Assembly (NCBI RefSeq): GCF_006345805.1
Contig: NC_043000.1
Location: 36,766,001-36,830,000 of the forward strand
Direction of reading: 5' to 3'
DNA from: Octopus sinensis
Taxonomy: Eukaryota
Length of the DNA: 64,000 bases
Below the pieces are notes generated by a model. The model made no database searches. It was not told the DNA's origin and saw only the letters and a list, made by a program, of their open reading frames with translations. Position 1 is the stretch's first letter, and the number at the start of each line of letters is the position of its first letter. The position numbers were made by a program, and so were the translations under genes. This document shows, piece after piece, positions 4,023 to 42,074 of the stretch.

Positions 4023-4552
4023 TTGGGTTTTATTTCTTGCCTTTCTGAGTTCTTCGAATGACTTTCTAGAAGAATCCCTTTTGTATCGCATCAGAGCTGC
4101 GCGCTTTGCTTCGATAACTGGTTCCAACTCTGAAAGCCCAGCACTTATTTACCGGGGGCTGCCCAGCTTGAGGTGGGCAGTAACTAACCAGTGGAACACG
4201 AGGGTCCCTCCCATTTCCAGAGGTAACCCGTAGCGCCTATATCCTACGCCAATAAGAATGGATTTACCACTCGTGACTGCTACCTCAATGATTTTTCTAC
4301 CACTTTTTACAGCAGCACTGAAGTGTCCTCTCCAGTTTTGTGCAGGCCTGAAATAGATGTAAGAAAATCCTGGGTAGTCCAATCGGCAGGATTCCTCTCT
4401 CGACCTTGCTGACGTCCAAAGGAGTGTAGAGCATTACGTTTGGTACCAGCTTGGTTGCAGGAGCTGCCGGAAGAGTGTCGAGTCGAACAGTAAACCGCCA
4501 ACGGGGCTCCACTCCGGATTTCTTTGAAGGTTGTCTCCTACAAAGTTACTCT
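4023..4552 (-). mobile_element. Inverted 5' segment of RTE element 1 (putative 5' UTR joined to a mid-ORF piece)
   Basis: Minus 4140-4023 encodes AGLSELEPVIEAKRAALMRYKRDSSRKSFEELRKARNKTQ, which overlaps the start of the plus-strand ORF at 4553. Segment 4552-4141 is GC-richer and non-coding; its RTE 5' UTR identity is inferred. Confidence 0.75.
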
Positions 4553-6210
4553 AAGAACTCAGAAAGGCAAGTAATAAAACCCAACTGACTGCCAGATGCT
4601 GTGCAAATATGTATTGGCAGGAAATTTGTCAGAGTATCCAGTCAGCTGCTGACAGTGGCGACAACAGGTTTGAGAATAGCCTTCGGTCCATCCGCAACCA
4701 AGTTAGCCCCTCTGAAAAAACTACTGAAGATCTCATCAAAGACCAAAGCAAGCAAATGGATAGATGGATGGAGTACTACCAGGATCTCTACTCACGGGAG
4801 ACCATGGTTGCTGAAGCTGCAATCGAAGGGTGTCGAGATCTTGTCAGCCATGTGCAAACTTGACAGTCTGTCGTCCATGCCAGATCTCACCAAGGCTATT
4901 GATTCCTTAGCAAGTAACAAGGCTCCGAGAAAAACCAGCATCCCCTCACAGATCATCAAAGCCGGCAAAAACACCGCTCTGCTTCAGCACCTTCATGAGC
5001 TTCTGTGTCAGAGCTGGGAAAAGGGTACAGTCCCTCAGGATATGCAGGATGCTAACATCATTACCCTTTACAAAAACAAAAGTGACCGTGGTGATTGTAA
5101 CAATTGCCGTGGAATATCTCTTCAATGCACCGTTGGAAAGACCTTTGCTCGCGTTATCTTGTCCAGGCTACAACTGCTTGCTTCTCGAATTTATCCAGAA
5201 TCGCAGTGTGGCTGTAGAAGAAGCAGATCAACTATTGACTTGATATTCTCTATACGTCAACTTCAGGAGAAGTCCAGGGAGCAGAAAATGCCATTATATA
5301 TGGCCTTCATTGATCTGACAAAGGCCTTTGAGTTGGTTAGTAGAAAAGGCCACTTCATCCTGCTCCAAAAAATCGGAGGTCCACCAAAGCTGCTGAGGAT
5401 CATCAAATCTTTCCATGATGATATGCAAGGCACCATACAGCACAATGGTTCAACATCAGCCGCCTTCCAAATAAAAAAATGGGGTAAAGCAAGGTTGTGT
5501 CCTTGCTCCTACATAATTTGGCATCTTCTCGCTGCTGTTGTCACATGCCTTTGAGACATCAGATGATGGAGTGTTTCTGCACAGTAGAAGTGATGGGAAA
5601 CTGTTCAATCTCTCGCGTCTGCGTGTCAGTACTAAAATCAGAAGCGTCCTGATCAAGGAGATGCTATTTGCTGCTGCTGCTGCTCTGGTATCACACACAG
5701 AAGAAACCCTGAAAAGGCTCATCAACTGTTTTGAGCAAGCATGTCGTGACTTTAACTTAGTTATCAGCCTCAAGAAGACCAACATCATGGGTCAGACTAT
5801 ATCGGACAACCCAAACATACATATTGGAGACCACAGACTACAGGAGGTGGAGAAGTTTACTTATCTTGGCTCTACCGTCACCTACAACCTATCCCTTGAT
5901 GCCGAGCTCAATATACGCATTGGCAAGTCAGGTGCTGCGATGGCCTAATTCTCCAAACGGGCATGGGACAACAATAAGCTGACCAAAACCACAAAAATGA
6001 AGATTTACCAGGCATGTGTACTTAGCACTCTACTGTATGGCAGTGAGACCTGGACACCATGCACACGCCAAGAGCGTCACCTAAATATCTTTTACCTGCG
6101 CTGTCTCCGGAAAATCCTTGGCAGCAAATGGCAGAATCGTGTCACCAACAAAGATGTCTTCAAGCAAGCAGGGATACCAAGGTGTTTGCACTCCTCATAC
6201 AAAGACGTCA
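4553..6210 (+). pseudogene. RTE-clade LINE reverse transcriptase, frameshifted, 3' end lost
   Basis: ORFs 4609-4863, 4601-5554, 5538-5948 and 5997-6251 give NKAP, RGISL, PESQCG, FIDLTKAF, MLFAAAAAL (FADD mutated), FTYLGS and LLYGSETWT. Confidence 0.93.
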
Positions 6211-7762: not shown

Positions 7763-9279
7763 CATATGTATGTGTGTACATGTGTATGTGTATATATATA
7801 TATATATATATATAAATGAGATAGGGAGAGGGTATGGTGCCTGCGTATGCCTGTTAGTCAGATGGATAGGCAAGCAGGCGGACAGATAGACAAGCGAATA
7901 TGTGGATATAAATTGGAAGATAATTAATGAGAGATGCTAGAAAACACAATGGCACGACAAGGAAGAATAACTAATGGGTAATTTACCGAGAAAAGCAAGA
8001 CTGTTAGCAACTGGAAGTCTCCCACAATTGATAAACTATTAATGAAATTACTGCAGAGAGGCCAGAATCAATACTTCACGTGTTACTGAAGGGAAAACGA
8101 TATTTATTCCAAGAAACAAAAATACCAGCTACCCACAAAATTATAAACACATAATTTGTTTATGACCAATAAATAGTAGCCAACATGGATAACGTGAAAG
8201 CGTTTTGTCAGTTCTGTTGTGTGTAATGCAGAGATGAGGGAGTATGATTAGTTCTACATATACAATGAGTAAAACATTTGCTCAATTATTGATATAAATT
8301 TAATGGGAGTTTGGCATGTAAGGACGACAACTCCAGAGATATTTCGGTACTGGTATATATCCTCAGATAAGCATAGCCTTCACAGTGATCGCCAAGCTTG
8401 GGATGAAAATCGTACAAAAGATGACCGTTTAGTTACTGCGATCATATTGTAATTATAAAAATTGCCGTCGTAGGAATTTACAGACTTCGACAGACGCGAA
8501 GTACTTGAACGCTGTAAATAACAGCATGTAAATAACGAGTTAAAGGAAACCCTTCGTATACAAAATGTTGACAAGGCCTCCCTACGCAAGATAGCTTGTG
8601 CAGACATGAGAATATATCATAACGGTGTAGATTATTATTTTTTAAATATGATTTCAGAAATGACAGAACACATCTCTAGATATATTTTACGAGTTTTTAA
8701 TCGCATCAGAAAAGTACAGTAACTTAATATTTAACCACAAAAATCTTCCCTAGTGTGTACGTGTTACCAGAAAAATCTTCTCTGGAGATTACATGTCCTC
8801 TTACAGTCGTCTCTCTTCATTTTTAATTCTACCAAAGCATACATTCCATCAAACTGCTAGTAGTTATAAATATGCTATGGACAAGACAATGAATCATCTC
8901 CTCTAAATAATTTATAATTCTCAGTAGAAGATAATAACCAGTTGGGCAGCTACTAAAAGCTGTTTGGTAGATTCAGTAACGATATAAAAATATGAGAGAA
9001 GAAAAATATGAAAATGTGTAACACCTATGGAAAAAGAAGTAAATGACTTAACGCGTAGAAAATGAAGATTGATTTAGGCGCTAAATTTAAGGAAAAAAAA
9101 AGTAGTATCACCCATACATGTATTTAACAGTGGACGAAGCAGGTAAGATACATGACCATACTAAGGAGATAATTATAAAAAATAGTGTATTATAGAGGCG
9201 TCCAACAAAAAGCTGAATTTAAAAAAGAACAAAATAAAGAAAAAAGTAAGATTGTAAATATTACAATTTATTTTTTATT

Positions 9280-9458: not shown

Positions 9459-10754
9459 ACTTAATTAGTTCCCCCATTAATGAGTTTTAGAGTTATGAAA
9501 TGGAGATTAAGTAGACTGAAGAACCTCTGTTGGAAATTATGAGGATTGAGCCGTGTCTAAATAATTCTTACTGAGCACACAGAACAGCGATGATCCAAAT
9601 CATAACAAATCTAGTCATTCTTCATCTGTTCTGGTAGGTTCAAATATGAACGTCCAATCACTTTTGTTTTTCGTCGATTCACCGGCATTGGGGAACTTAG
9701 AGACACCGTGGTGTTTCGATCTTCATGTGTGTCTCTTGAGTCAAAGCTAAACCACCAAACCGATGAATTTCTTGAGAGCACGTGCTTTGCTTGTTGGAAT
9801 CAACAAAACAAATTATTTACTGATGTTTACTGATATCTGCCGGATTGAGAAAAAGAAAAATTATGAGGTGCATGCAGAACATGAACTATCCAAACGGTAA
9901 CATGTTAACTCATTCTTAATGTCCGTGCTAATCGCTGTTGTTCTCCGTCATCGGAAAACGCCTAAATTCTCAAACTGATTCAGATATGACATCCTACAAC
10001 ACATCTAACTAAGGAGGTTAGTTACATAAAGAGATAACTTTAGTAATGGAGATAGATTAGTTTAATATGAAACGGAAAAGCAAGATGGACACGTCGTCAT
10101 GTAACAGTAGGACAATAAAAATGTCTGAAAAGAATGTTGAAACAGGAAAATTGCTAGAAAACTATATTTGCAAGAGGGCACAGATTGACAATACGTAAAG
10201 CTGCAATAACTTTAAGATATATTTAATTATACATAGATACCAGTAATTACCTGTGCGCAGGAAGATCAAATCAGTTAACTGGAGCCTAGTAGAAGGACAG
10301 CTTTTATTTTATTGACGTGAAAATGATACAAGATAACGATGAAGATAATCTCACTGGACTTCAAAATCTTTACATTCCAAATATTAAACAAAATATATTT
10401 AGCCCACGGCTGAACTGCTTTTTGTCGTCTGCCTAGTCATCAACTACCTCCCGTCTCCGATTATGGCCATTTTTAGATTTTCCTTACAATAGAAGGGGTT
10501 CAGGAGGGAGAAGGCTATCCCAAACCACACGACTCTACGGAATATTTCCTTAAAGGTATCGAGGAAATAGGTGATGGTAATGTTGTGCTAGGGAATGGAT
10601 GAAAGTACTTTTGTTTACTCCCAGATAAACGCCAGCATATTGATGCACAAAGCTTATCCGGGCATGACAATCCACTACCTTTTCTATAGCAGGGGCTATG
10701 TCCTCCAATATATTCTGCTTTATGTGAGTGAGTAGGGGAAGTCATGGCGGTCTG

Positions 10755-11100
10755 GTTAAGAAGTTCATTTGACAACCATGTGGTTTCGGGTTCAGCTCCT
10801 CTGCGTAGCATCTTGAGCAAGTGTCTCCTACAGTAGCCACGGGCCGATCAATGCTTTGTGGTAAAGAGGAAACTGCGTGAAAGCCCGGTGTGTGTGTGTG
10901 TGTGCCTTCGTTTCTGCGTTTGTCCCTCAGCTTAATATCCAAAATTTGTCTCCGTTCCTGTAACATAGTGGTTCGGCAAAAGATCAAATAGAATTATGTC
11001 CAGAGTTTAAAGATACGTAATGGAGCGTATCTGTTTGACGATATCCCTTCAATGTAGTGTTCCAGAATGGTTTCACTCCAGTGACTGAAATAAGTGAAGG
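10755..11100 (+). mobile_element. SINE family B, diverged
   Basis: AACCATGTGGTTTCGGGTTCAG..TTGAGCAAGTGTC..(GT)n..GGTTCGGCAAAAGA..GACTGAAA. Confidence 0.65.
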
Positions 11101-11646
11101 AATTTATGTAAGTCGTCAGGGTGTGAATGTCAGGAAATTTAGCTGCTGTTTCTTCCGATTTAAATCACAGTGTAAAGGTACCTTTCTGAAGGTACCTCTA
11201 CGTTAAGGTTAGCCGTGGATATTCCTACCAACGACACATTCTTTATATTCTAGTTGCTTGTGGAAACTATGATCGTATTCATCGATCTGGATTTGGTTGG
11301 TTGGTTGTTTATTTTTATTTTCAAGCATGCAATTACCAAAGCTTTGGAAGATTTCTGCTGCGTAGAGCAAATCCGTCCAGTGTGTGGGCGTTCTCAGACA
11401 GTATATTATAAAGAATTGCAGCCAAACAAGAATTACCAATCCTTCAAGCAAGTCTTCTAATATTTGTGTCATCAATCGATCAATCACCGAGTTTTTTCTT
11501 CGGAAATAAGACGGTTCTCCTGAAACATCAACTCGAAATACAAATCAATAATTGACAAAATATCGATATATTGTGGCCAGATAAACCTGTGCACACATTG
11601 ACACATCTACATAGGTGTCTCCGTTTGCTTACTCAAATGCTGAATA

Positions 11647-11650
<4 letters not shown>

Positions 11651-11723
<73 letters not shown>

Positions 11724-28704: not shown

Positions 28705-28888
28705 TTTTATCTTTTACTTGCTTCAGGCATTAGACTGCGATCATGCTGGAGCACCAACTTGAATTTTTAGTCGAACGAATCGTCCCTAATACTAGGGTAG
28801 TTCTTCTATCGGGCTATTTTGCTGAACCGTTAAGTTACGGGGTCATAAACGCCGGTTGTCAATCGGTGGTAAGAGGAACAAAGACACA

Positions 28889-28944
<56 letters not shown>
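28705..28944 (-). mobile_element. SINE family B 3' half ending in (AT)n at 28892-28944
   Basis: TTTTACTTGCTTCAGGCATTAGACTGCGATCATGCTGGAGCACC..CCGGTTGTCAA. Confidence 0.8.
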
Positions 28945-28947
<3 letters not shown>

Positions 28948-28980
28948 GAAAGAATTGAGTTGAACGACGAATTAACAAAA

Positions 28981-29079
28981 TTCCTTTATTCTCGACATAT
29001 GTTTCGAAGGCTGCATATTCCTAATTTCGAAGGAATAAGGGGTGCATTATGCCGCCTTCTCATCAGGAAAAACAAGGAA
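28981..29079 (-). ncRNA. Type I hammerhead ribozyme (PLE type, palindromic helix III)
   Basis: Minus: UUCCUUGUUUUUC-CUGAUGA-GAAGGC..GCCUUC-GAAA-CAUAUG-UC/GAGAAUAAAGGAA. All core nucleotides present; GUC triplet; predicted cut between 28994 and 28993. Confidence 0.88.
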
Positions 29080-29663
29080 CTTATGTCAGCATCAAGATGA
29101 ACAAAAACTTTTAGATGACTGCCCACACGGAGCCCATAGCGATAATGAGTGTTTCTGTAAAATAATCCGTTATAAGCAGTGACGTCAAAAATGGTTGAAT
29201 GTAGAAGATTCTAGAAGGTTCAAGGGTTCAAACAAGGTTGGAGGAGAGAGGTCTAAGAATAGGAAGGTGACAGGGTGCAAGTCATATGAATGGTGATTTG
29301 TTGTTGTTTTCTTTTGTGATTGAGTGCCTATGTGTGTGTATGTATATAACTGCATTCATGTCTATGTGTGTGCGTGATTGTGTGTGTGGTTGGGTAGATG
29401 CCAAAAACAAACAGTGGTGAAGTGACAGATTTGTGTCTGTGTGTTTGATTGTGCTTACGATAGAGAGAGGGACAGAGAGAGAGAGAGAGAGGAGGGCGAG
29501 GTAGAGAGACAAAGGTAAAACATACCTCAATGGATTGGGTAGTAGTCCTTTATGAGTATAAAAATTGACTATGGGGGTGATGTATAAATGGAACTAAATT
29601 ATTAAAATTCAAGGAGGTTATCTATATTAATCATCATTCATATGAGGGAAAGGTGTGTTTCTG

Positions 29664-30113
29664 CTAGTGCATGCACCTATAGGATTTTTCGACCATTGTA
29701 TTTATTAAAAGGACTTTGGCGAACAATATATGGAAAAGTTCGGAATTACAGACGCCACAAAATTTTCTGCCCTTATCAAACGAAAAGGATACAGACAATA
29801 TGGACCATTCCAGCTTGAAAGTTGTATTGCTGTCTTTAAGACGCCAAACTAATTTACTTAGTCCTGTGCTTTGTTGTTTTCTCTTATCTCGGAAAGTTGA
29901 ATAATGATTGGAGATCCTCTGGGCTAATTTAGAAGTAGTTGCCCCAATGTAGAAGAAGACATCGGCACCGGAAGAAATTTTACACTGGTAAATGGAATTT
30001 CTAATTTTGGAATTGCTGGATAAGAACTTTAATCTGTTAGGGTTTACCTCCGAGACTAAGACGGAGTTTTTATTGTTATGATTGCTGTTAATATTATTGC
30101 TAGCATTGACCAC
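29664..30113 (-). CDS. Penelope-type GIY-YIG endonuclease domain, no internal stop; frame open upstream to 30188, no in-frame ATG upstream of the domain
   Basis: SIYQCKI..FYIGATT (GIY-YIG), QRISNH, STGLSKLVW.LK, CGVCNSE, LIN..E..CMH. Confidence 0.85.
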   Translation of the reverse strand: MVNASNNINSNHNNKNSVLVSEVNPNRLKFLSSNSKIRNSIYQCKISSGADVFFYIGATTSKLAQRISNHYSTFRDKRKQQSTGLSKLVWRLKDSNTTFKLEWSILSVSFSFDKGRKFCGVCNSELFHILFAKVLLINTMVEKSYRCMH

Positions 30114-30139
30114 AATACTATTCCTATCATTATCATTAC

Positions 30140-30325
30140 TATTAATTGTACTATCATCGGCAATTTCCCTGACTATAGTCCCCGTATCTTAGCGGTTCGG
30201 CAAAAGAAACCGATAGAATAATTACTAGGTTTACAGAAAATAAAAATCCTAGGGTCGATTTGTTCGATTCAAGGCGATGCTGCAGCATGGCCGCAGTCAA
30301 ATGACTGAAACAAATAAAAGCATAA
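30140..30325 (+). mobile_element. SINE family B 3' half
   Basis: GTCCCCGTATCTTAGCGGTTCGGCAAAAG..GCATGGCCGCAGTCAAATGACTGAAAC. Confidence 0.8.
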
Positions 30326-32675
30326 AAGAATATATTGTCCACTTATCCCGACTCTCTCTCTCTTCTTTCTTTCTCTCTCTCTCCCTCTATTTTTCCTTCT
30401 CTGTATCTGTCTCATTCTCACACTGTGTGTGTGTGTGTGTCTATGTGCTTCTGTATGCGATTTATAGTTTAGATTGAATGATAGCTATTGATACATACAT
30501 ATATATATTCGCATCTCATATATATAAACGCGCGCGCATATATGTGTGTGTGTATGTATATATATACATATATATATACACAACGTAACATTTGACAGAA
30601 AGGCGACAGAAGCACTGGGGAAGATTTGAGAGGGAGAGGCGATAGAAAGGCAACCAGATAGAAAGGAGGAGGGGGGAGAGATATTAAGAGAAACACAAAG
30701 AGTGGGAGGAAAGAAGAAAAAAGCACTTAGATTACATATATCATATTCATAGAATTGGAAAAGTGAAATCATAGGTGATCGATAGATCAATAATAAACCT
30801 AAAATAAAAAGAGCACAGATAGGAGGTAGGTAGAAATTAGAGCGTGAGTGTGAGGGAGAGAAAGGGACTGGTTGGTGGTGGCGGTAGAACATGAATAGAA
30901 AGATATCGACAAGGCAAGGAAATGAATGTGTGCGTGTATGCATTTGTGTATACATGTGTGTGTGCATATATTTTTATATGTGTGTGTATGCGTGTATAGG
31001 CACATAGACACACACGAATTGTAAAGTTCCGCGTATCTTTCCATTTACATAACTCCATTTTATTATTGTACTCAAGTTCTGAATTTGACGTAATTCTATA
31101 TTAAGTTCTGCTTCGTTGAGCTCTTTTAGAACTAGAATGTTCTTCTTTGTCTTCTTGATATTATTATTAGAGAAGTTTCTGGATATTTACTCAAATCGTT
31201 TGAAATAGTAGATACATATCTCTGTCATATCACACCATTCCGTCTTAAAAATAAAAGGGAAGGTTTGAGTAAAGTCATCGAACTTATATTAAAGAATTGA
31301 TAACAACTGTAGCCGATAATCGCAAAAGTCACCTGATCGAGGTGGATCTGGAAGTAGATAAAAAAAACAATAACCCAATGTAAGAAATCGCTTTACTAAT
31401 TCCAAGAATGTCAGTCGCGATTTGCCTTGTTTATATATATCCTCGTTTGGTACGGGTTTTGAATTCATGAACCCTCTGCACGCACGTTGTAAATGGAACG
31501 AGAGAGAGAGAGAGATTCATTGGCACCAAACTTGTTGTCCACAACAGTAAAGCCTTTCACTTTAACGTACTTCGTTGATCCTTTCTAATTCTTCCCGTAG
31601 AGAATCCATTCATCTGCTTTGTTGGTCAGGATCAGGCACCTTCTTATTTTTCGGTTCACTGGTTCTATGTTGAAAGTAACAAATAGATAAACCCGTTTAA
31701 AGATTGTGCAGCCTTTCGGTACGATGATGTATACATAAGTGATAGTCGATGCATTCTGGGTTAGTCGAAGATTAAGGCGTGGTCACTGGTTTGTGTGTTT
31801 GCAGTGCAAACGGAATCATCGACTGAATGCTAACCCTTATTCTCACAGATCAATCCGTGGTAAGAGTAGCAAGGTTCAGAATGGAGCGTATCCTGTTATC
31901 TCGCAACGGTGACGAATAAATTATGGTTAAACGTGTCTACATGTATTTCTTGTGGGATGGATTCTTTATTCAATATTATGAGTTTACCTCCAAGGTTGTG
32001 TACAGAAGTTTGATTCGCAATTGCTCGCAGTTTGGGATTCAGTCTTGGCATTTTAAACAAATGTCTTTTCTAACACCGTGTACGTTTCACTAAAGATTTC
32101 TGAGAGAAGTCTTTACTTCTTGGAATCTCACGAGAGATATCGTGCTTGGTTCGTATACCTGATCCATTACGTAGTTTAATACACACGTGATAGTTTGGAG
32201 TCATTGCCAAGGGTAGCAGAACTACAAGAATTTGGTCCAAGTCTCCAGCCTGAGGATAAATTCTTCTCAGCATTCTCAGTGACGCTGAAAAAGGTCTCGG
32301 ATTCTGTAATTCCACCACTGACAAAGCCATAGAAGATAATTAAAAGAATTAATAAATAAAAATGTGCCTGCTTGTTTGGCAAGGTTTCGAATTCTGTAAT
32401 AGCATTTCTTTATCAGAAGATATCCAAGAAGCCATTTGATGATAAAACATAATTTAGACTTGATAGATTTTAAGTCAACTTGGATGGGAATTGAACCTAG
32501 GCTACAAAGGAACGTAGTCTGAATACTACCAGATACTGGGCCTTACACGCTTTCCAGTCTATATTCTTAACCCCCGTGGATCCTTATCAAAAACTACATC
32601 CCAGGAAAAACCCTGTCAGCATATTTTTCATTCTTTAAAATAAAGTAAATCCCTGTTTGATATGAAGTTTAATAT

Positions 32676-39431: not shown

Positions 39432-39805
39432 TTATCTTTTACTTGCTTCAGGCATTGCACCGCAAACATGTTGGAAAACCGTCATGAAGGGATTTAGCCG
39501 AACGAATAAATCTTCCCCAGTACTTAGTCTTAACTTGGTACGTACTGTGTCGATATTTTTGCCGAACCGCTAGGCGACGAGGACATAAACACCCGTTGTC
39601 AAGCAGTGTAGGAACACACACACACACACACACACAAATAACATACATATGTAGACGATGGGCTTCATTCAGTTTCTATCTACCTACTTCACTCACAAGG
39701 CTTTGTTCAATCAAAGGCTATAGTAACACACCGCTGCCAAACGTGTCGTGCAGTGGAGTTGAACACGGACCATCTCATTGGGATAAAAATCTTCTAACCA
39801 AACAC
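39432..39805 (-). mobile_element. SINE family B, diverged
   Basis: TTTTACTTGCTTCAG..CCGAACCGCTAG..(AC)n..ACTCACAAGGCTTTG..GCAGTGG. Confidence 0.75.
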
Positions 39806-39937
39806 CTACGCCTGACATTTTTGTGTATCCTTGAAACTCCGAGTAAAGACCATGACTGTCTTTACAACAAATATATACTCTACTTGACGTATGGCGCACA
39901 CTTTTCTATGACTATTCTCTGACACGTAATTCTCTGG
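39705..39937 (+). repeat. Left arm of a 233-bp inverted duplication (right arm 41534-41767)
   Basis: ORFs 39711-39899 (-) and 41572-41754 (+) give nearly identical peptides; the shared part extends into non-SINE flank. Confidence 0.92.
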
Positions 39938-41065: not shown

Positions 41066-42074
41066 TGTTGGTCACCCTTCTTTCTTTTCTCTCCTTATCC
41101 CCTCCCCTATTCCTTACTTCCTTGTTACTACCCTTTGCCATGTCGACTTGTGGAGATAAAGCTTGCATGTAGATTCCATCACAAACGACCTTGATAATTT
41201 AGTAGTGGGGGGGGAGCGACCTGATCACAAATCGTTTTCTTACTACTAAAGCAACTCCCTAATAGATGAACCTAGACTAAGGGAGCTGCCCCTCCTCTCT
41301 TGTTAGAAGTAAAAATAAGTGGGTCACTGGATTTTGTTATTGCTAGCCCCTCCTAAAAGCTCTACCAACCTCTAAATCTCTTTCCCTGATCAAATATTCC
41401 GGTAACTTTATTCTGTCAACTGTAAATGTTCGACTGTCCTTTTATGGATTCATCTGACGAAAACAGTTTCTTTACAATGATGTAATGTTTTAATTAATTA
41501 AGAGTCGTTAGAAATGGCTGCACTGGTTTAACACCAGAGAATTACGTGTCAGAGAATAGTCATAGAAAACTGTGCGCCATACGTCAAGTAGAGTATATGT
41601 TTGTTGTAAAGACAGTCATGGTCTTTACTCGGAGTTTCAAGGATACACGAAAATATCAGGCGTAGGTGTTTGGTTAGAAGATTTTTATCCCAATGAGATG
41701 GTTCCGTGTTTAACTCCACTGCACGACACGTCTGGCAGCGGTGTGTTACTATAGCCTCTGATTAAACGTACTGTTTATATATATATATATAGTTAGATAT
41801 AGTCTCTTAATTATTTTAGTCGAACGAATCGACCCTAGCCTTTTTTTTTTATTTTGCTACGCATGGTATTTATTCAATCCGTCACATTTGTTGAAGAACT
41901 AAGTTACGGGGATGTAAACACATGAACACCAGTTGCCAAGTGGTAGTGAGCGACAAACGGACAAAAGGACGTGTGTATGTGTGTGTGTGTACATATACGA
42001 GGGATGTATGATAAGCCTAAAAAAAAAAAAACATGGTATACGACTTCTGATGAAGGTACAAGATTTCAAGGCTC

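What the first reader, a model, noticed from the sequence alone, without database searches (positions are those of the whole stretch)
28981..29079. Apparently intact type I hammerhead ribozyme in a Penelope-like pLTR, with an unusually extended helix II
Seen on the minus strand: helix I of 5 bp + 2x2 internal loop + 6 bp; core CUGAUGA; helix II GAAGGC/GCCUUC continued by GCAU/AUGC and a distal AUUCCU/AGGAAU hairpin; GAAA; helix III formed by the 8-nt palindrome ACAUAUGU; GUC cleavage triplet (cut between 28994 and 28993); AAUAAA just downstream. Established: PLE pLTRs carry hammerheads whose palindromic helix III favours cleavage as dimers. Inference: this copy is catalytically competent. The long helix I and branched helix II go beyond the minimal form and may define a distinct family able to yield defined or circular RNAs.
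Basis: partly seen in the sequence, partly recalled or inferred. Interest (0 to 1): 0.82.

Follow-up and report, generated by a model that had tools for sequence, protein, structure and literature searches.

The report
Hammerhead ribozyme in truncated octopus retroelement
The motif is a real, sequence-intact type I hammerhead ribozyme at the 3' end of a dead, 5'-truncated Penelope-like retroelement (Hydra clade) in an octopus-like genome. This is a known kind of association, and its only unusual trait is a long helix II shared with sister copies.

Summary
On the minus strand at 29079..28981 there is a complete type I hammerhead: CUGAUGA, GAAA, an A15.1-U16.1 pair, GUC with the cut between 28994 and 28993, a G10.1-C11.1 pair, a 5 bp + 2x2 loop + 6 bp helix I and a 54-nt helix II. 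No shuffled window reproduced it (0 of 200). It is the only such motif in the 64 kb. It lies 584 nt downstream of a GIY-YIG endonuclease ORF whose relatives carry the hallmarks of the 'Hydra' clade of Penelope-like elements (Craig et al. 2021). The element ends in a (TA)n tract, as that clade does. Two paralogous Octopus sinensis copies and one related family keep the ribozyme. It is the best-conserved 100-nt block of the element (94% and 77% identity), and helices I and II carry compensatory changes. Helix II is extended and bulged, not branched. It spans 48-76 nt in the octopus families with an undeleted helix II, against 15-23 nt in two non-octopus Hydra-clade elements. Rfam misses all of them. 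This copy has no reverse transcriptase, no second repeat (so no demonstrable pLTR) and no partner ribozyme. Folding predicts that helix III forms only in a dimer. Catalytic competence and circular RNAs remain untested. Verdict: a lineage-specific variant of a known ribozyme-retroelement pairing, of modest interest.

The parts
28981..29079 (-). Complete type I hammerhead ribozyme motif (99 nt)
   Evidence: Read directly. Unique descriptor hit in the window, with 0 of 200 shuffles matching. The minimum-energy fold reproduces helices I and II. Conserved in paralogues L001 and L003.
29067..29079 (-). Helix I, 5' strand (UUCCUU-GU-UUUUC)
   Evidence: Pairs with 28993-28981 as 5 bp + 2x2 loop + 6 bp. 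L001 carries a compensatory U-A to C-G change.
29060..29066 (-). Catalytic core box C3-A9 (CUGAUGA)
   Evidence: Also intact in L001 and L012, and CUGAAGA in L003 (N7 is free). Mutated in L009 (CUGGCGA) and in the second L001 relic (CCGAUGA).
29006..29059 (-). Extended helix II (54 nt): 6 bp, a G.A mismatch, 5 bp, a 12-nt bulge, a 5-bp distal hairpin and an 8-nt loop
   Evidence: pair probabilities 0.35-1.0. The proximal 11 pairs are 93% paired across 5 sequences, and 4 of them change on both sides. The distal hairpin is not supported by covariation.
29002..29005 (-). Core box G12-A13-A14-A15.1 (GAAA)
   Evidence: Invariant in all five aligned homologues.
28995..29002 (-). Helix III palindrome ACAUAUGU (monomer: 2 bp plus the loop AUAU)
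   Evidence: Monomer pair probability is 0.01-0.02. In the cofolded dimer it forms an 8-bp intermolecular helix.
28994..28994 (-). C17 of the GUC triplet; predicted scissile bond between 28994 and 28993
   Evidence: with the standard hammerhead numbering (established knowledge).
28981..28993 (-). Helix I, 3' strand (GAGAA-UA-AAGGAA); contains AAUAAA at 28990-28985
   Evidence: The AAUAAA is not conserved: it is AGUAAA in L001 and disrupted in L003.
28945..28980 (-). 3' tail of the element between the ribozyme and the (TA)n tract
   Evidence: Shared by the window, L001 and L003 copies up to the TA-rich junction.
28892..28944 (.). (TA)n microsatellite at the 3' junction (insertion target)
   Evidence: The L001 copy also ends in (TA)n. 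Insertion into (TA)n is reported for almost all Hydra-clade families (PMC8557442 section 11).
29664..30113 (-). 149-aa ORF holding the GIY-YIG endonuclease domain (Hydra-clade type: no CCHH; CxxC..E..N..CxH)
   Evidence: Pfam GIY-YIG E = 7.9e-4, below the gathering score. 2141 HMMER relatives. Motifs read. tblastn matches to long RT-EN proteins.
28945..30178 (-). Whole retained fragment of the retroelement (5'-truncated; linker remnant, EN, 3' UTR with the ribozyme)
   Evidence: 80% identical over this span to L001 10416-11693. No RT homology anywhere in the window.

Best explanation
The 99-nt motif is the hammerhead ribozyme carried in the 3'-terminal (pLTR-forming) region of a Hydra-clade Penelope-like retrotransposon. 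It is preserved here in a solitary, 5'-truncated, non-autonomous copy that inserted into a (TA)n tract of an octopus-like genome.

Shown:
- The core, the three helices and the cleavage triplet are intact.
- The motif sits downstream of a Hydra-type GIY-YIG endonuclease.
- Sister copies keep it better than they keep the coding sequence, with compensatory changes in helices I and II.
- The long helix II is a shared trait of octopus families.

Inferred:
- In active master elements transcribed as tandem or read-through RNAs, two ribozyme copies pair through the palindrome ACAUAUGU to build a double hammerhead. It cuts 3' of C17 (GUC|G) and leaves a 2',3'-cyclic phosphate and a 5'-OH.
- The extended helix II was selected in the masters, either for ribozyme folding or as part of a conserved ~190-nt 3' module that the element's protein recognises.
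- In this particular copy the ribozyme is a relic. Without a partner it is probably nearly inactive.
For: Motif and statistics.

Retroelement identity:
- The ORF 29664-30113 has a GIY-YIG domain and 2141 HMMER relatives.
- The long relatives (P0108, P0122, P0107, P0053, P0062) show YRDDGL and ADKT reverse-transcriptase motifs, a CxCX5C linker and an endonuclease without CCHH but with CxxC..E..N..CxH. These are the features Craig et al. list for the Hydra clade, together with short units, (TA)n targets and readily detected hammerheads (PMC8557442).
- Sister copy L003 retains reverse-transcriptase remnants upstream of the endonuclease.
- Non-octopus relatives carry hammerheads at the same place. 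L018 starts at 2373. L021 spans 2022-2075 and is followed by the next tandem ORF with the RWK motif. L019 and L020 have terminal direct repeats implying 2568-nt tandem units.

Conservation:
- The ribozyme block is the best-conserved 100-nt window of the element: 0.94 against L001 and 0.77 against L003. Coding sequence scores 0.82-0.91 and 0.69-0.75.
- 82% of cells are paired, against 37-49% in the slid controls.
- 9 pairs change on both sides, against 1-5 in the slid controls. Only 0-1 of 500 shuffles reach the observed cells paired, double-change counts and covariation score (by hand).

Dimer: the cofold energy is -62.8 kcal/mol against 2 x -27.7, with an 8-bp intermolecular helix III. Published work shows that metazoan PLE hammerheads cleave poorly as monomers and better as dimers (PMC4209133).
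Against: - No Rfam hammerhead model matches this or any homologue, even at E <= 10.
- Only three same-family copies and two relatives could be retrieved. The covariation sample is therefore tiny, and the structure was derived from one of the sequences.
- The distal hairpin of helix II is not conserved.
- Lengthening stem II by even one pair lowered activity in a bacterial hammerhead (PMC3088659), so the extension could be harmful.
- All copies extend about 35-45 nt past the cut site, so the integrated templates were uncleaved there.
- For another PLE, ribozyme-dead mutants inserted normally in vitro, and no RNA-seq ends mapped to the cut site (PMC11167929).
- The conserved block runs from about 29130 to 28940, beyond the ribozyme on both sides.
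Confidence: 0.75

Rival explanations
1. The conserved 3'-terminal ~190 nt, ribozyme fold included, is mainly a recognition or priming module for the element's RT-EN protein during target-primed reverse transcription. Self-cleavage is vestigial or irrelevant, and the long helix II is a protein-binding arm.
For: Conservation of 0.90-0.94 spans 29130-28940, not just the ribozyme. The genomic copies include the tail beyond the cut site. In the anole PLE, ribozyme-dead mutants insert normally and no transcripts end at the cut site (PMC11167929). Naiad elements proliferate without hammerheads (PMC8557442).
Against: The invariant positions are exactly the catalytic ones, and the helix III palindrome is retained as ACAUAUGU, ACAUGUGU or ACAAUUGU across families. 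A protein-binding role alone does not explain this. Fungal and some PLE hammerheads do cleave (PMC4209133; PMC11167929).
Confidence: 0.15
2. The motif is a decayed pseudo-ribozyme. The 28-50 nt expansion of helix II, perhaps linked to the internal repeat of CCUUCGAAA, disabled the loop-loop contacts. The family's hammerhead no longer cleaves, and the intact core in this copy is residual.
For: CCUUCGAAA occurs twice inside the motif, giving an alternative shorter helix II. Several relatives have dead cores: L009 with A6 to G, and the second L001 relic with U4 to C. L012 appears to have lost one strand of helix II. Stem II length is critical in tested hammerheads.
Against: The proximal 11 bp of the extension are maintained by double changes across copies and families. 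The block is more conserved than the coding sequence. Three of three same-family copies keep all core bases.
Confidence: 0.08
3. The motif is a chance match to the hammerhead consensus in AT-rich non-coding DNA.
For: Core plus helix II plus GAAA matches occur by chance in 24% of shuffled windows. Rfam gives no hit.
Against: The full descriptor matched 0 of 200 shuffles. Homologous motifs sit at the same position in paralogues and in other Hydra-clade elements.
Confidence: 0.02

Closest known systems
Hammerheads of Hydra-clade Penelope-like elements (Craig, Yushenova, Rodriguez & Arkhipova 2021, PMC8557442)
   Same: The endonuclease is C-terminal and GIY-YIG, lacks CCHH and has CxxC..E..N..CxH. 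The element inserts into (TA)n. The hammerhead lies downstream of the ORF. The clade is reported in Mollusca. Relatives retrieved here (L018, L021) have the ribozyme at the same position.
   Different: Helix II is 54 nt here, and 48-76 nt in other octopus families with an undeleted helix II. It is 15-23 nt in L018 and L021. The octopus proteins have lost the cysteines of the CxCX5C linker. This copy lacks the reverse transcriptase and any pLTR.
Minimal hammerheads (min-HHRs) of metazoan PLEs (Cervera & de la Pena 2014, PMC4209133)
   Same: Type I topology, a very short palindromic helix III that implies action as a dimer, a larger than usual helix II, and a location in the terminal repeat region of PLEs.
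   Different: Those motifs have a helix II of 6-8 bp, a helix I of 4-5 bp and usually an extra unpaired base after A9. Here helix II is 16 bp plus bulges, helix I is 11 bp with an internal loop, there is no extra base, and G10.1-C11.1 is canonical.
Classical dimer-dependent type I hammerheads of newt and Schistosoma satellites and animal non-LTR retrozymes (PMC7229834; bioRxiv 10.64898/2026.07.22.740005)
   Same: Type I hammerhead, weak palindromic helix III, an internal loop in helix I, and an evolutionary link to PLE pLTRs.
   Different: Those occur as tandem 170-400-bp repeats that give circular RNAs. Here there is one copy in 64 kb, no tandem repeat, and helix II is far longer than the usual 4 bp.
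Rfam Hammerhead_1 / HH9 / HH10 / Hammerhead_3 families
   Same: The same catalytic core and three-way junction.
   Different: No model reaches even E = 10 on this motif or on its homologues.

Membership tests
Hammerhead ribozyme, type I | 5' core box C3 U4 G5 A6 N7 G8 A9 | tested here: met
   CUGAUGA at 29066-29060.
Hammerhead ribozyme, type I | 3' core G12 A13 A14, an A15.1-U16.1 pair, and H17 (not G) at the cleavage site | tested here: met
   GAAA at 29005-29002, A 29002 pairing with U 28995, and C17 at 28994 in GUC.
Hammerhead ribozyme, type I | Three helices around the core, with helix I open and helices II and III closed, and G10.1-C11.1 closing helix II | tested here: met
   Helices I and II are in the minimum-energy fold with pair probabilities of 0.86-1.0 for all but the outermost pair of helix I (0.43) and the last two pairs of the GCAUA/UAUGC segment of helix II (0.60, 0.35). 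Helix III is only 2 bp in the monomer and 8 bp in the dimer. G 29059 pairs with C 29006.
Hammerhead ribozyme, type I | Helices supported by covariation among homologues | tested here: met
   9 of 29 pairs change on both sides, and 82% of cells are paired against 37-49% in the slid controls. This rests on only 5 sequences, so support is limited.
Hammerhead ribozyme, type I | Match to a curated covariance model (Rfam RF00163 and related) | tested here: not met
   No hammerhead hit at gathering score or at E <= 10. The long helix II and the minimal helix III probably cost too many bits (inference).
Hammerhead ribozyme, type I | Tertiary contact between helices I and II | not testable with these tools
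   Candidate elements exist: the 2x2 loop in helix I, and the G.A mismatch and 12-nt bulge in helix II. No structural test was possible.
Hammerhead ribozyme, type I | Site-specific self-cleavage | not testable with these tools
   Requires transcription and cleavage assays.
Penelope-like element, Hydra clade | GIY-YIG endonuclease lacking CCHH, with CxxC and CxH around the conserved E and N | tested here: met
   The window ORF reads ..FYIG..RISNH..FCGVCNSELF..INT..RCMH. Pfam GIY-YIG E = 7.9e-4. Relatives. Definition.
Penelope-like element, Hydra clade | Reverse transcriptase N-terminal to the endonuclease in a single ORF, in a short unit (<3 kb) | tested here: not met
   There is no RT homology in the window, so this copy is truncated. 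The feature is met for the family: there are RT remnants upstream of the endonuclease in L003, L009 and L012, and full RT-EN in L014, L018 and L021.
Penelope-like element, Hydra clade | CxCX5C linker motif upstream of GIY-YIG | tested here: not met
   Present in P0053, P0062, P0108 and P0122. It is replaced by a Cys-free NPNRLKFLSSNSK in the window, P0001 and P0003, with similarly Cys-depleted linkers in P0002, P0004 and P0005.
Penelope-like element, Hydra clade | Insertion into (TA)n | tested here: met
   (TA)n at 28944-28892 abuts the 3' end. The same holds in L001.
Penelope-like element, Hydra clade | Pseudo-LTRs (direct repeats from partial tandem copies) carrying the hammerhead | tested here: not met
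   There is no second copy of the ribozyme region in the window, or in 20 kb of L001 or 7 kb of L003. Tandem organisation is seen only in distant relatives L019, L020 and L021.
Animal non-LTR retrozyme | Tandem 170-400-bp repeats, each with a type I hammerhead | tested here: not met
   There is a single motif in 64 kb and no tandem repeat at the locus.

The most novel reading that the evidence does not exclude
Cephalopod Hydra-clade Penelope-like elements carry a distinct hammerhead subclass. Its helix II has grown into a 48-76-nt structured arm that is kept by selection. The arm either replaces the usual loop-loop tertiary contact or doubles as a docking or dimerisation platform for the element's RT-EN protein. 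Current covariance models and descriptors systematically miss this subclass.
Probability: 0.3. Interest if true: 0.5.

Novelty: new variant of a known kind. Interest (0 to 1): 0.3.

Why it matters
Hammerheads in Penelope-like elements are well documented, so the basic finding is expected. Three points go slightly beyond that.

1. A clear example, with homologues, in an octopus Hydra-clade family.
2. Evidence that a long, partly covarying helix II is a lineage trait. Rfam and standard descriptors miss it, so hammerhead counts in cephalopod genomes are probably too low.
3. Genomic copies that run past the cleavage site. This adds to the published doubts that cleavage at the 3' ribozyme is needed for insertion.

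If the extended arm proved functional, it would give a natural test case for how stem II length and internal loops tune a dimer-dependent hammerhead.

Tried and rejected
- **Rfam.** Searched at gathering score and at E <= 10 on the window, the locus and three homologous loci. No hammerhead hit appeared, only microsatellite-driven miRNA noise.
- **Metagenome DNA scan.** An exact-pattern scan with the conserved 3' half (TGCAGCCTTYGAAACATRTGT) gave three chance hits with no CUGAUGA upstream.
- **Protein-word searches for more octopus copies.** Only P0001-P0005 and two weak hits (P0156, P0157) exist in the database, so no further genomic copies could be fetched.
- **Logan contigs of the P0002 family.** These (L004-L008) are too short to reach the ribozyme.
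- **Supplementary hammerhead tables of Craig et al. 2021.** Not held.
- **Naiad (N-terminal endonuclease) identity.** Considered because Naiads target (TA)n and leave remnants in cephalopods. Rejected because reverse-transcriptase remnants lie upstream of the endonuclease in L003, L009 and L012, and because the endonuclease lacks CCHH.
- **Retrozyme identity.** Rejected because there is no tandem repeat.
- **Palindromic helix II loop (UUCGAA) as a kissing-loop dimerisation site.** Not conserved in L001 or L003, so dropped.
- **tRNA-like scan of the flanking SINE-like repeats.** Found nothing.

Full report
**Observation**

On the minus strand, 29079..28981 reads UUCCUUGUUUUUC-CUGAUGA-[54 nt]-GAAA-CAUAUGU-C-GAGAAUAAAGGAA.

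- A descriptor scan of both strands found this to be the only CUGANGA / helix II >=4 bp / GAAA motif in the 64-kb window.
- A fuller descriptor also required helix III, a non-G at position 17 and a helix I of at least 10 of 13 pairs. It matched once in the window and in none of 200 dinucleotide-preserving shuffles. The core-only level arose by chance in 24% of shuffles.
- The 99-nt RNA folds into helices I and II as its minimum-energy structure: -27.7 kcal/mol, z = -3.3.
- Two details need correcting. Helix II is a single stem interrupted by a G.A mismatch and a 12-nt bulge, not a branched structure. The palindrome ACAUAUGU gives only a 2-bp helix III with a 4-nt loop in the monomer, with pair probability 0.01-0.02.
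- Rfam 15 reports no hammerhead at gathering score, nor at E <= 10 in a 700-nt search.

**What surrounds it**

The ORF 29664-30113 ends 584 nt upstream of the motif on the same strand. It encodes 149 aa with a weak Pfam GIY-YIG match, E = 7.9e-4, below the gathering score.

An exhaustive HMMER search found 2141 relatives at E <= 1e-3. Most are short endonuclease fragments. The long ones (P0108, 690 aa; P0122; P0107; P0053; P0062) carry several features upstream:

- a reverse-transcriptase-like region with YRDDGL, ADKT and FLDV..L..PY.KPN;
- a CxCX5C linker;
- an endonuclease without the CCHH motif but with CxxC...E...N...CxH.

These are the features Craig et al. (2021) give for the 'Hydra' clade of C-terminal-EN Penelope-like elements. 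That clade also has units under 3 kb, insertion into (TA)n in almost all families, readily detected hammerheads, and occurrence in Cnidaria, Mollusca, Echinodermata and Arthropoda (PMC8557442 section 11).

The window ORF shows FCGVC...E...N...RCMH, and the element ends at a 53-nt (TA)n tract at 28944-28892.

There is no reverse-transcriptase homology anywhere in the window. Similarity to the sister copy stops at 30178, where a SINE-like repeat begins. This copy is therefore a solitary 5'-truncated fragment of about 1.23 kb.

**Homologues**

The only close database proteins are from Octopus sinensis. Their loci gave two paralogous, non-syntenic copies of the same repeat.

| Locus | Aligned span | Identity to the window copy |
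|---|---|---|
| L001 | 10416-11693 | 80% over the whole fragment; also ends in (TA)n |
| L003 | ribozyme at 4400-4504 | 76% |

L003 keeps a 377-aa linker-EN ORF and a reverse-transcriptase C-terminal ORF upstream. This confirms the RT-then-EN order.

More distant cephalopod-type families on short Logan contigs also have the motif:

| Locus | Core | Helix II | Comment |
|---|---|---|---|
| L009 | CUGGCGA (A6 lost) | 48 nt | Homologous to the window's helix II |
| L012 | intact | 26 nt | The alignment suggests the 5' strand of the extension was deleted |
| L001 6529-6397, minus strand | CCGAUGA | 76 nt, truly branched | Second Hydra-like relic; helix III palindrome ACAAUUGU |

My covariance model recovered that second L001 relic independently, at 21.9 bits and E = 0.018.

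Two non-octopus Hydra-clade elements from ENA assemblies have ordinary-sized ribozymes at the same position:

- L018 from 2373: CUGAAGA-23 nt-GAAA-CAAUUUGUA.
- L021 at 2022-2075: CUGAAGA-15 nt-GAAA-CAUUUGUU. It is followed at 2217 by the start of the next tandem ORF with the RWK motif.
- L019 and L020 have terminal direct repeats that imply 2568-nt tandem units.

**Conservation and covariation**

In a three-way alignment, the block 29080-28987 is the most conserved 100-nt window of the whole element.

| Region | Identity to L001 | Identity to L003 |
|---|---|---|
| Ribozyme block 29080-28987 | 0.94 | 0.77 |
| Coding region | 0.82-0.91 | 0.69-0.75 |
| Low-complexity remainder of the 3' UTR | 0.52-0.72 | 0.24-0.65 |

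High conservation (0.90) extends about 50 nt upstream and into the 3' tail.

On a five-sequence alignment:

- 82% of cells form standard pairs, against 37-49% when the partners are slid by 1-3 columns.
- 9 of 29 pairs show changes on both sides, against 1-5 in the slid controls.
- Only 0-1 of 500 shuffles reach the observed cells paired, double-change counts and covariation score.
- The proximal 11 pairs of helix II are 93% paired, with four doubly changed pairs.

Examples read by hand are U-A to C-G in helix I (L001), U-A to A-U in the GCAU/AUGC segment (L003), and A-U to U-A (L009).

The distal hairpin of helix II is not maintained. The sample is very small, and the structure was derived from one member, so this is supportive rather than conclusive.

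**Mechanism**

Established knowledge is that metazoan PLE hammerheads have minimal palindromic helix III and cleave poorly or not at all as monomers. They gain activity as dimers (PMC4209133).

Cofolding two copies of the window motif gives exactly the double-hammerhead. It has an 8-bp intermolecular helix III and swapped helix I strands, at -62.8 kcal/mol against -55.4 for two monomers.

I infer that in active, tandemly organised masters the motif self-cleaves 3' of C17 in a dimeric fold.

Several observations limit the claim.

- The window copy has no partner within 64 kb.
- All three genomic copies continue about 35-45 nt beyond the cut site to a shared terminus. The reverse-transcribed RNAs were therefore uncleaved at this ribozyme.
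- In the anole PLE, ribozyme-dead mutants inserted normally, and no RNA-seq ends mapped to the cut site (PMC11167929).
- Adding pairs to stem II reduced activity in a tested hammerhead (PMC3088659).

The chief rival is that the conserved 3' module serves protein recognition, with cleavage secondary.

**Comparison and novelty**

The pairing of a hammerhead with a Hydra-clade PLE is published. The new elements are an octopus family and a helix II of 48-76 nt in three of the four octopus families sampled (26 nt in the fourth, apparently after a deletion). This compares with 15-23 nt in the other Hydra-clade elements retrieved here and 6-8 bp in published min-HHRs. The extension is partly covarying and is invisible to Rfam.

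I rate this a new variant of a known kind, of modest interest.

Noticed in passing
window 29664-30113 (-); L001 9848-10789; L003 2680-3813: The octopus Hydra-like endonuclease family has replaced the cysteines of the CxCX5C linker (CNCWDKDRCPLNGVC in relatives) with NPNRLKFLSSNSK. It also carries a long Asn/Ser-rich low-complexity tract upstream. A similarly Cys-depleted linker is seen in copies only 42-49% identical (P0002, P0004, P0005).
   Followed up: partly
L001 6397-6529 (-), downstream of an EN relic at L001 7768-6965 (-): A second Hydra-like element relic in Octopus sinensis. Its hammerhead relic has the core CCGAUGA, a 76-nt branched helix II and the palindrome ACAAUUGU. The covariance model recovered it at 21.9 bits, E = 0.018.
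   Followed up: partly
window 8622-8728 (-): A weak hammerhead-like relic, AAGUUACUGUACUUUU-CUGAUGC...GAAA-UCAUAUUU, whose flanks resemble the main motif (15.4 bits, E = 0.74). No endonuclease remnant lies nearby.
   Followed up: partly
window 29002-29066 (-): CCUUCGAAA occurs twice inside the ribozyme (29033-29025 and 29010-29002). This gives an alternative 5-bp helix II with the inner GAAA. It may record how the helix II extension arose, or it may be a competing fold; the ensemble strongly favours the outer pairing.
   Followed up: partly
window 30179-30340 and 28800-28891: The retroelement fragment is flanked by two copies, in opposite orientation, of a SINE-like repeat (TTTCAGTCATTTGACTGCGG...GTTGTCAA..GGTGG...GACA followed by a microsatellite). 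The (TA)n target looks like the microsatellite tail of one of them. Many further copies are scattered in the window, and ARAGORN finds no tRNA-like head.
   Followed up: partly
window 4601-5554 (+): A 317-aa ORF that looks like a non-LTR (LINE) reverse-transcriptase fragment. The surrounding 1.7 kb (4534-6208) is 88.7% identical to L001 610-2292.
   Followed up: no
window 39769-39937 and 41534-41702: A 169-nt inverted repeat, 98% complementary, with arms 1596 nt apart. It may mark the ends of a DNA transposon or a recent inverted duplication.
   Followed up: no
L019 1-113 / 2569-2681; L020 1-53 / 2569-2621; L021 2022-2432: Non-octopus Hydra-clade elements in ENA metagenome assemblies appear as tandem units of 2568 nt. 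The hammerhead lies between successive ORFs, and the next ORF starts with the RWK motif. This illustrates the pLTR arrangement that is missing in the window.
   Followed up: partly
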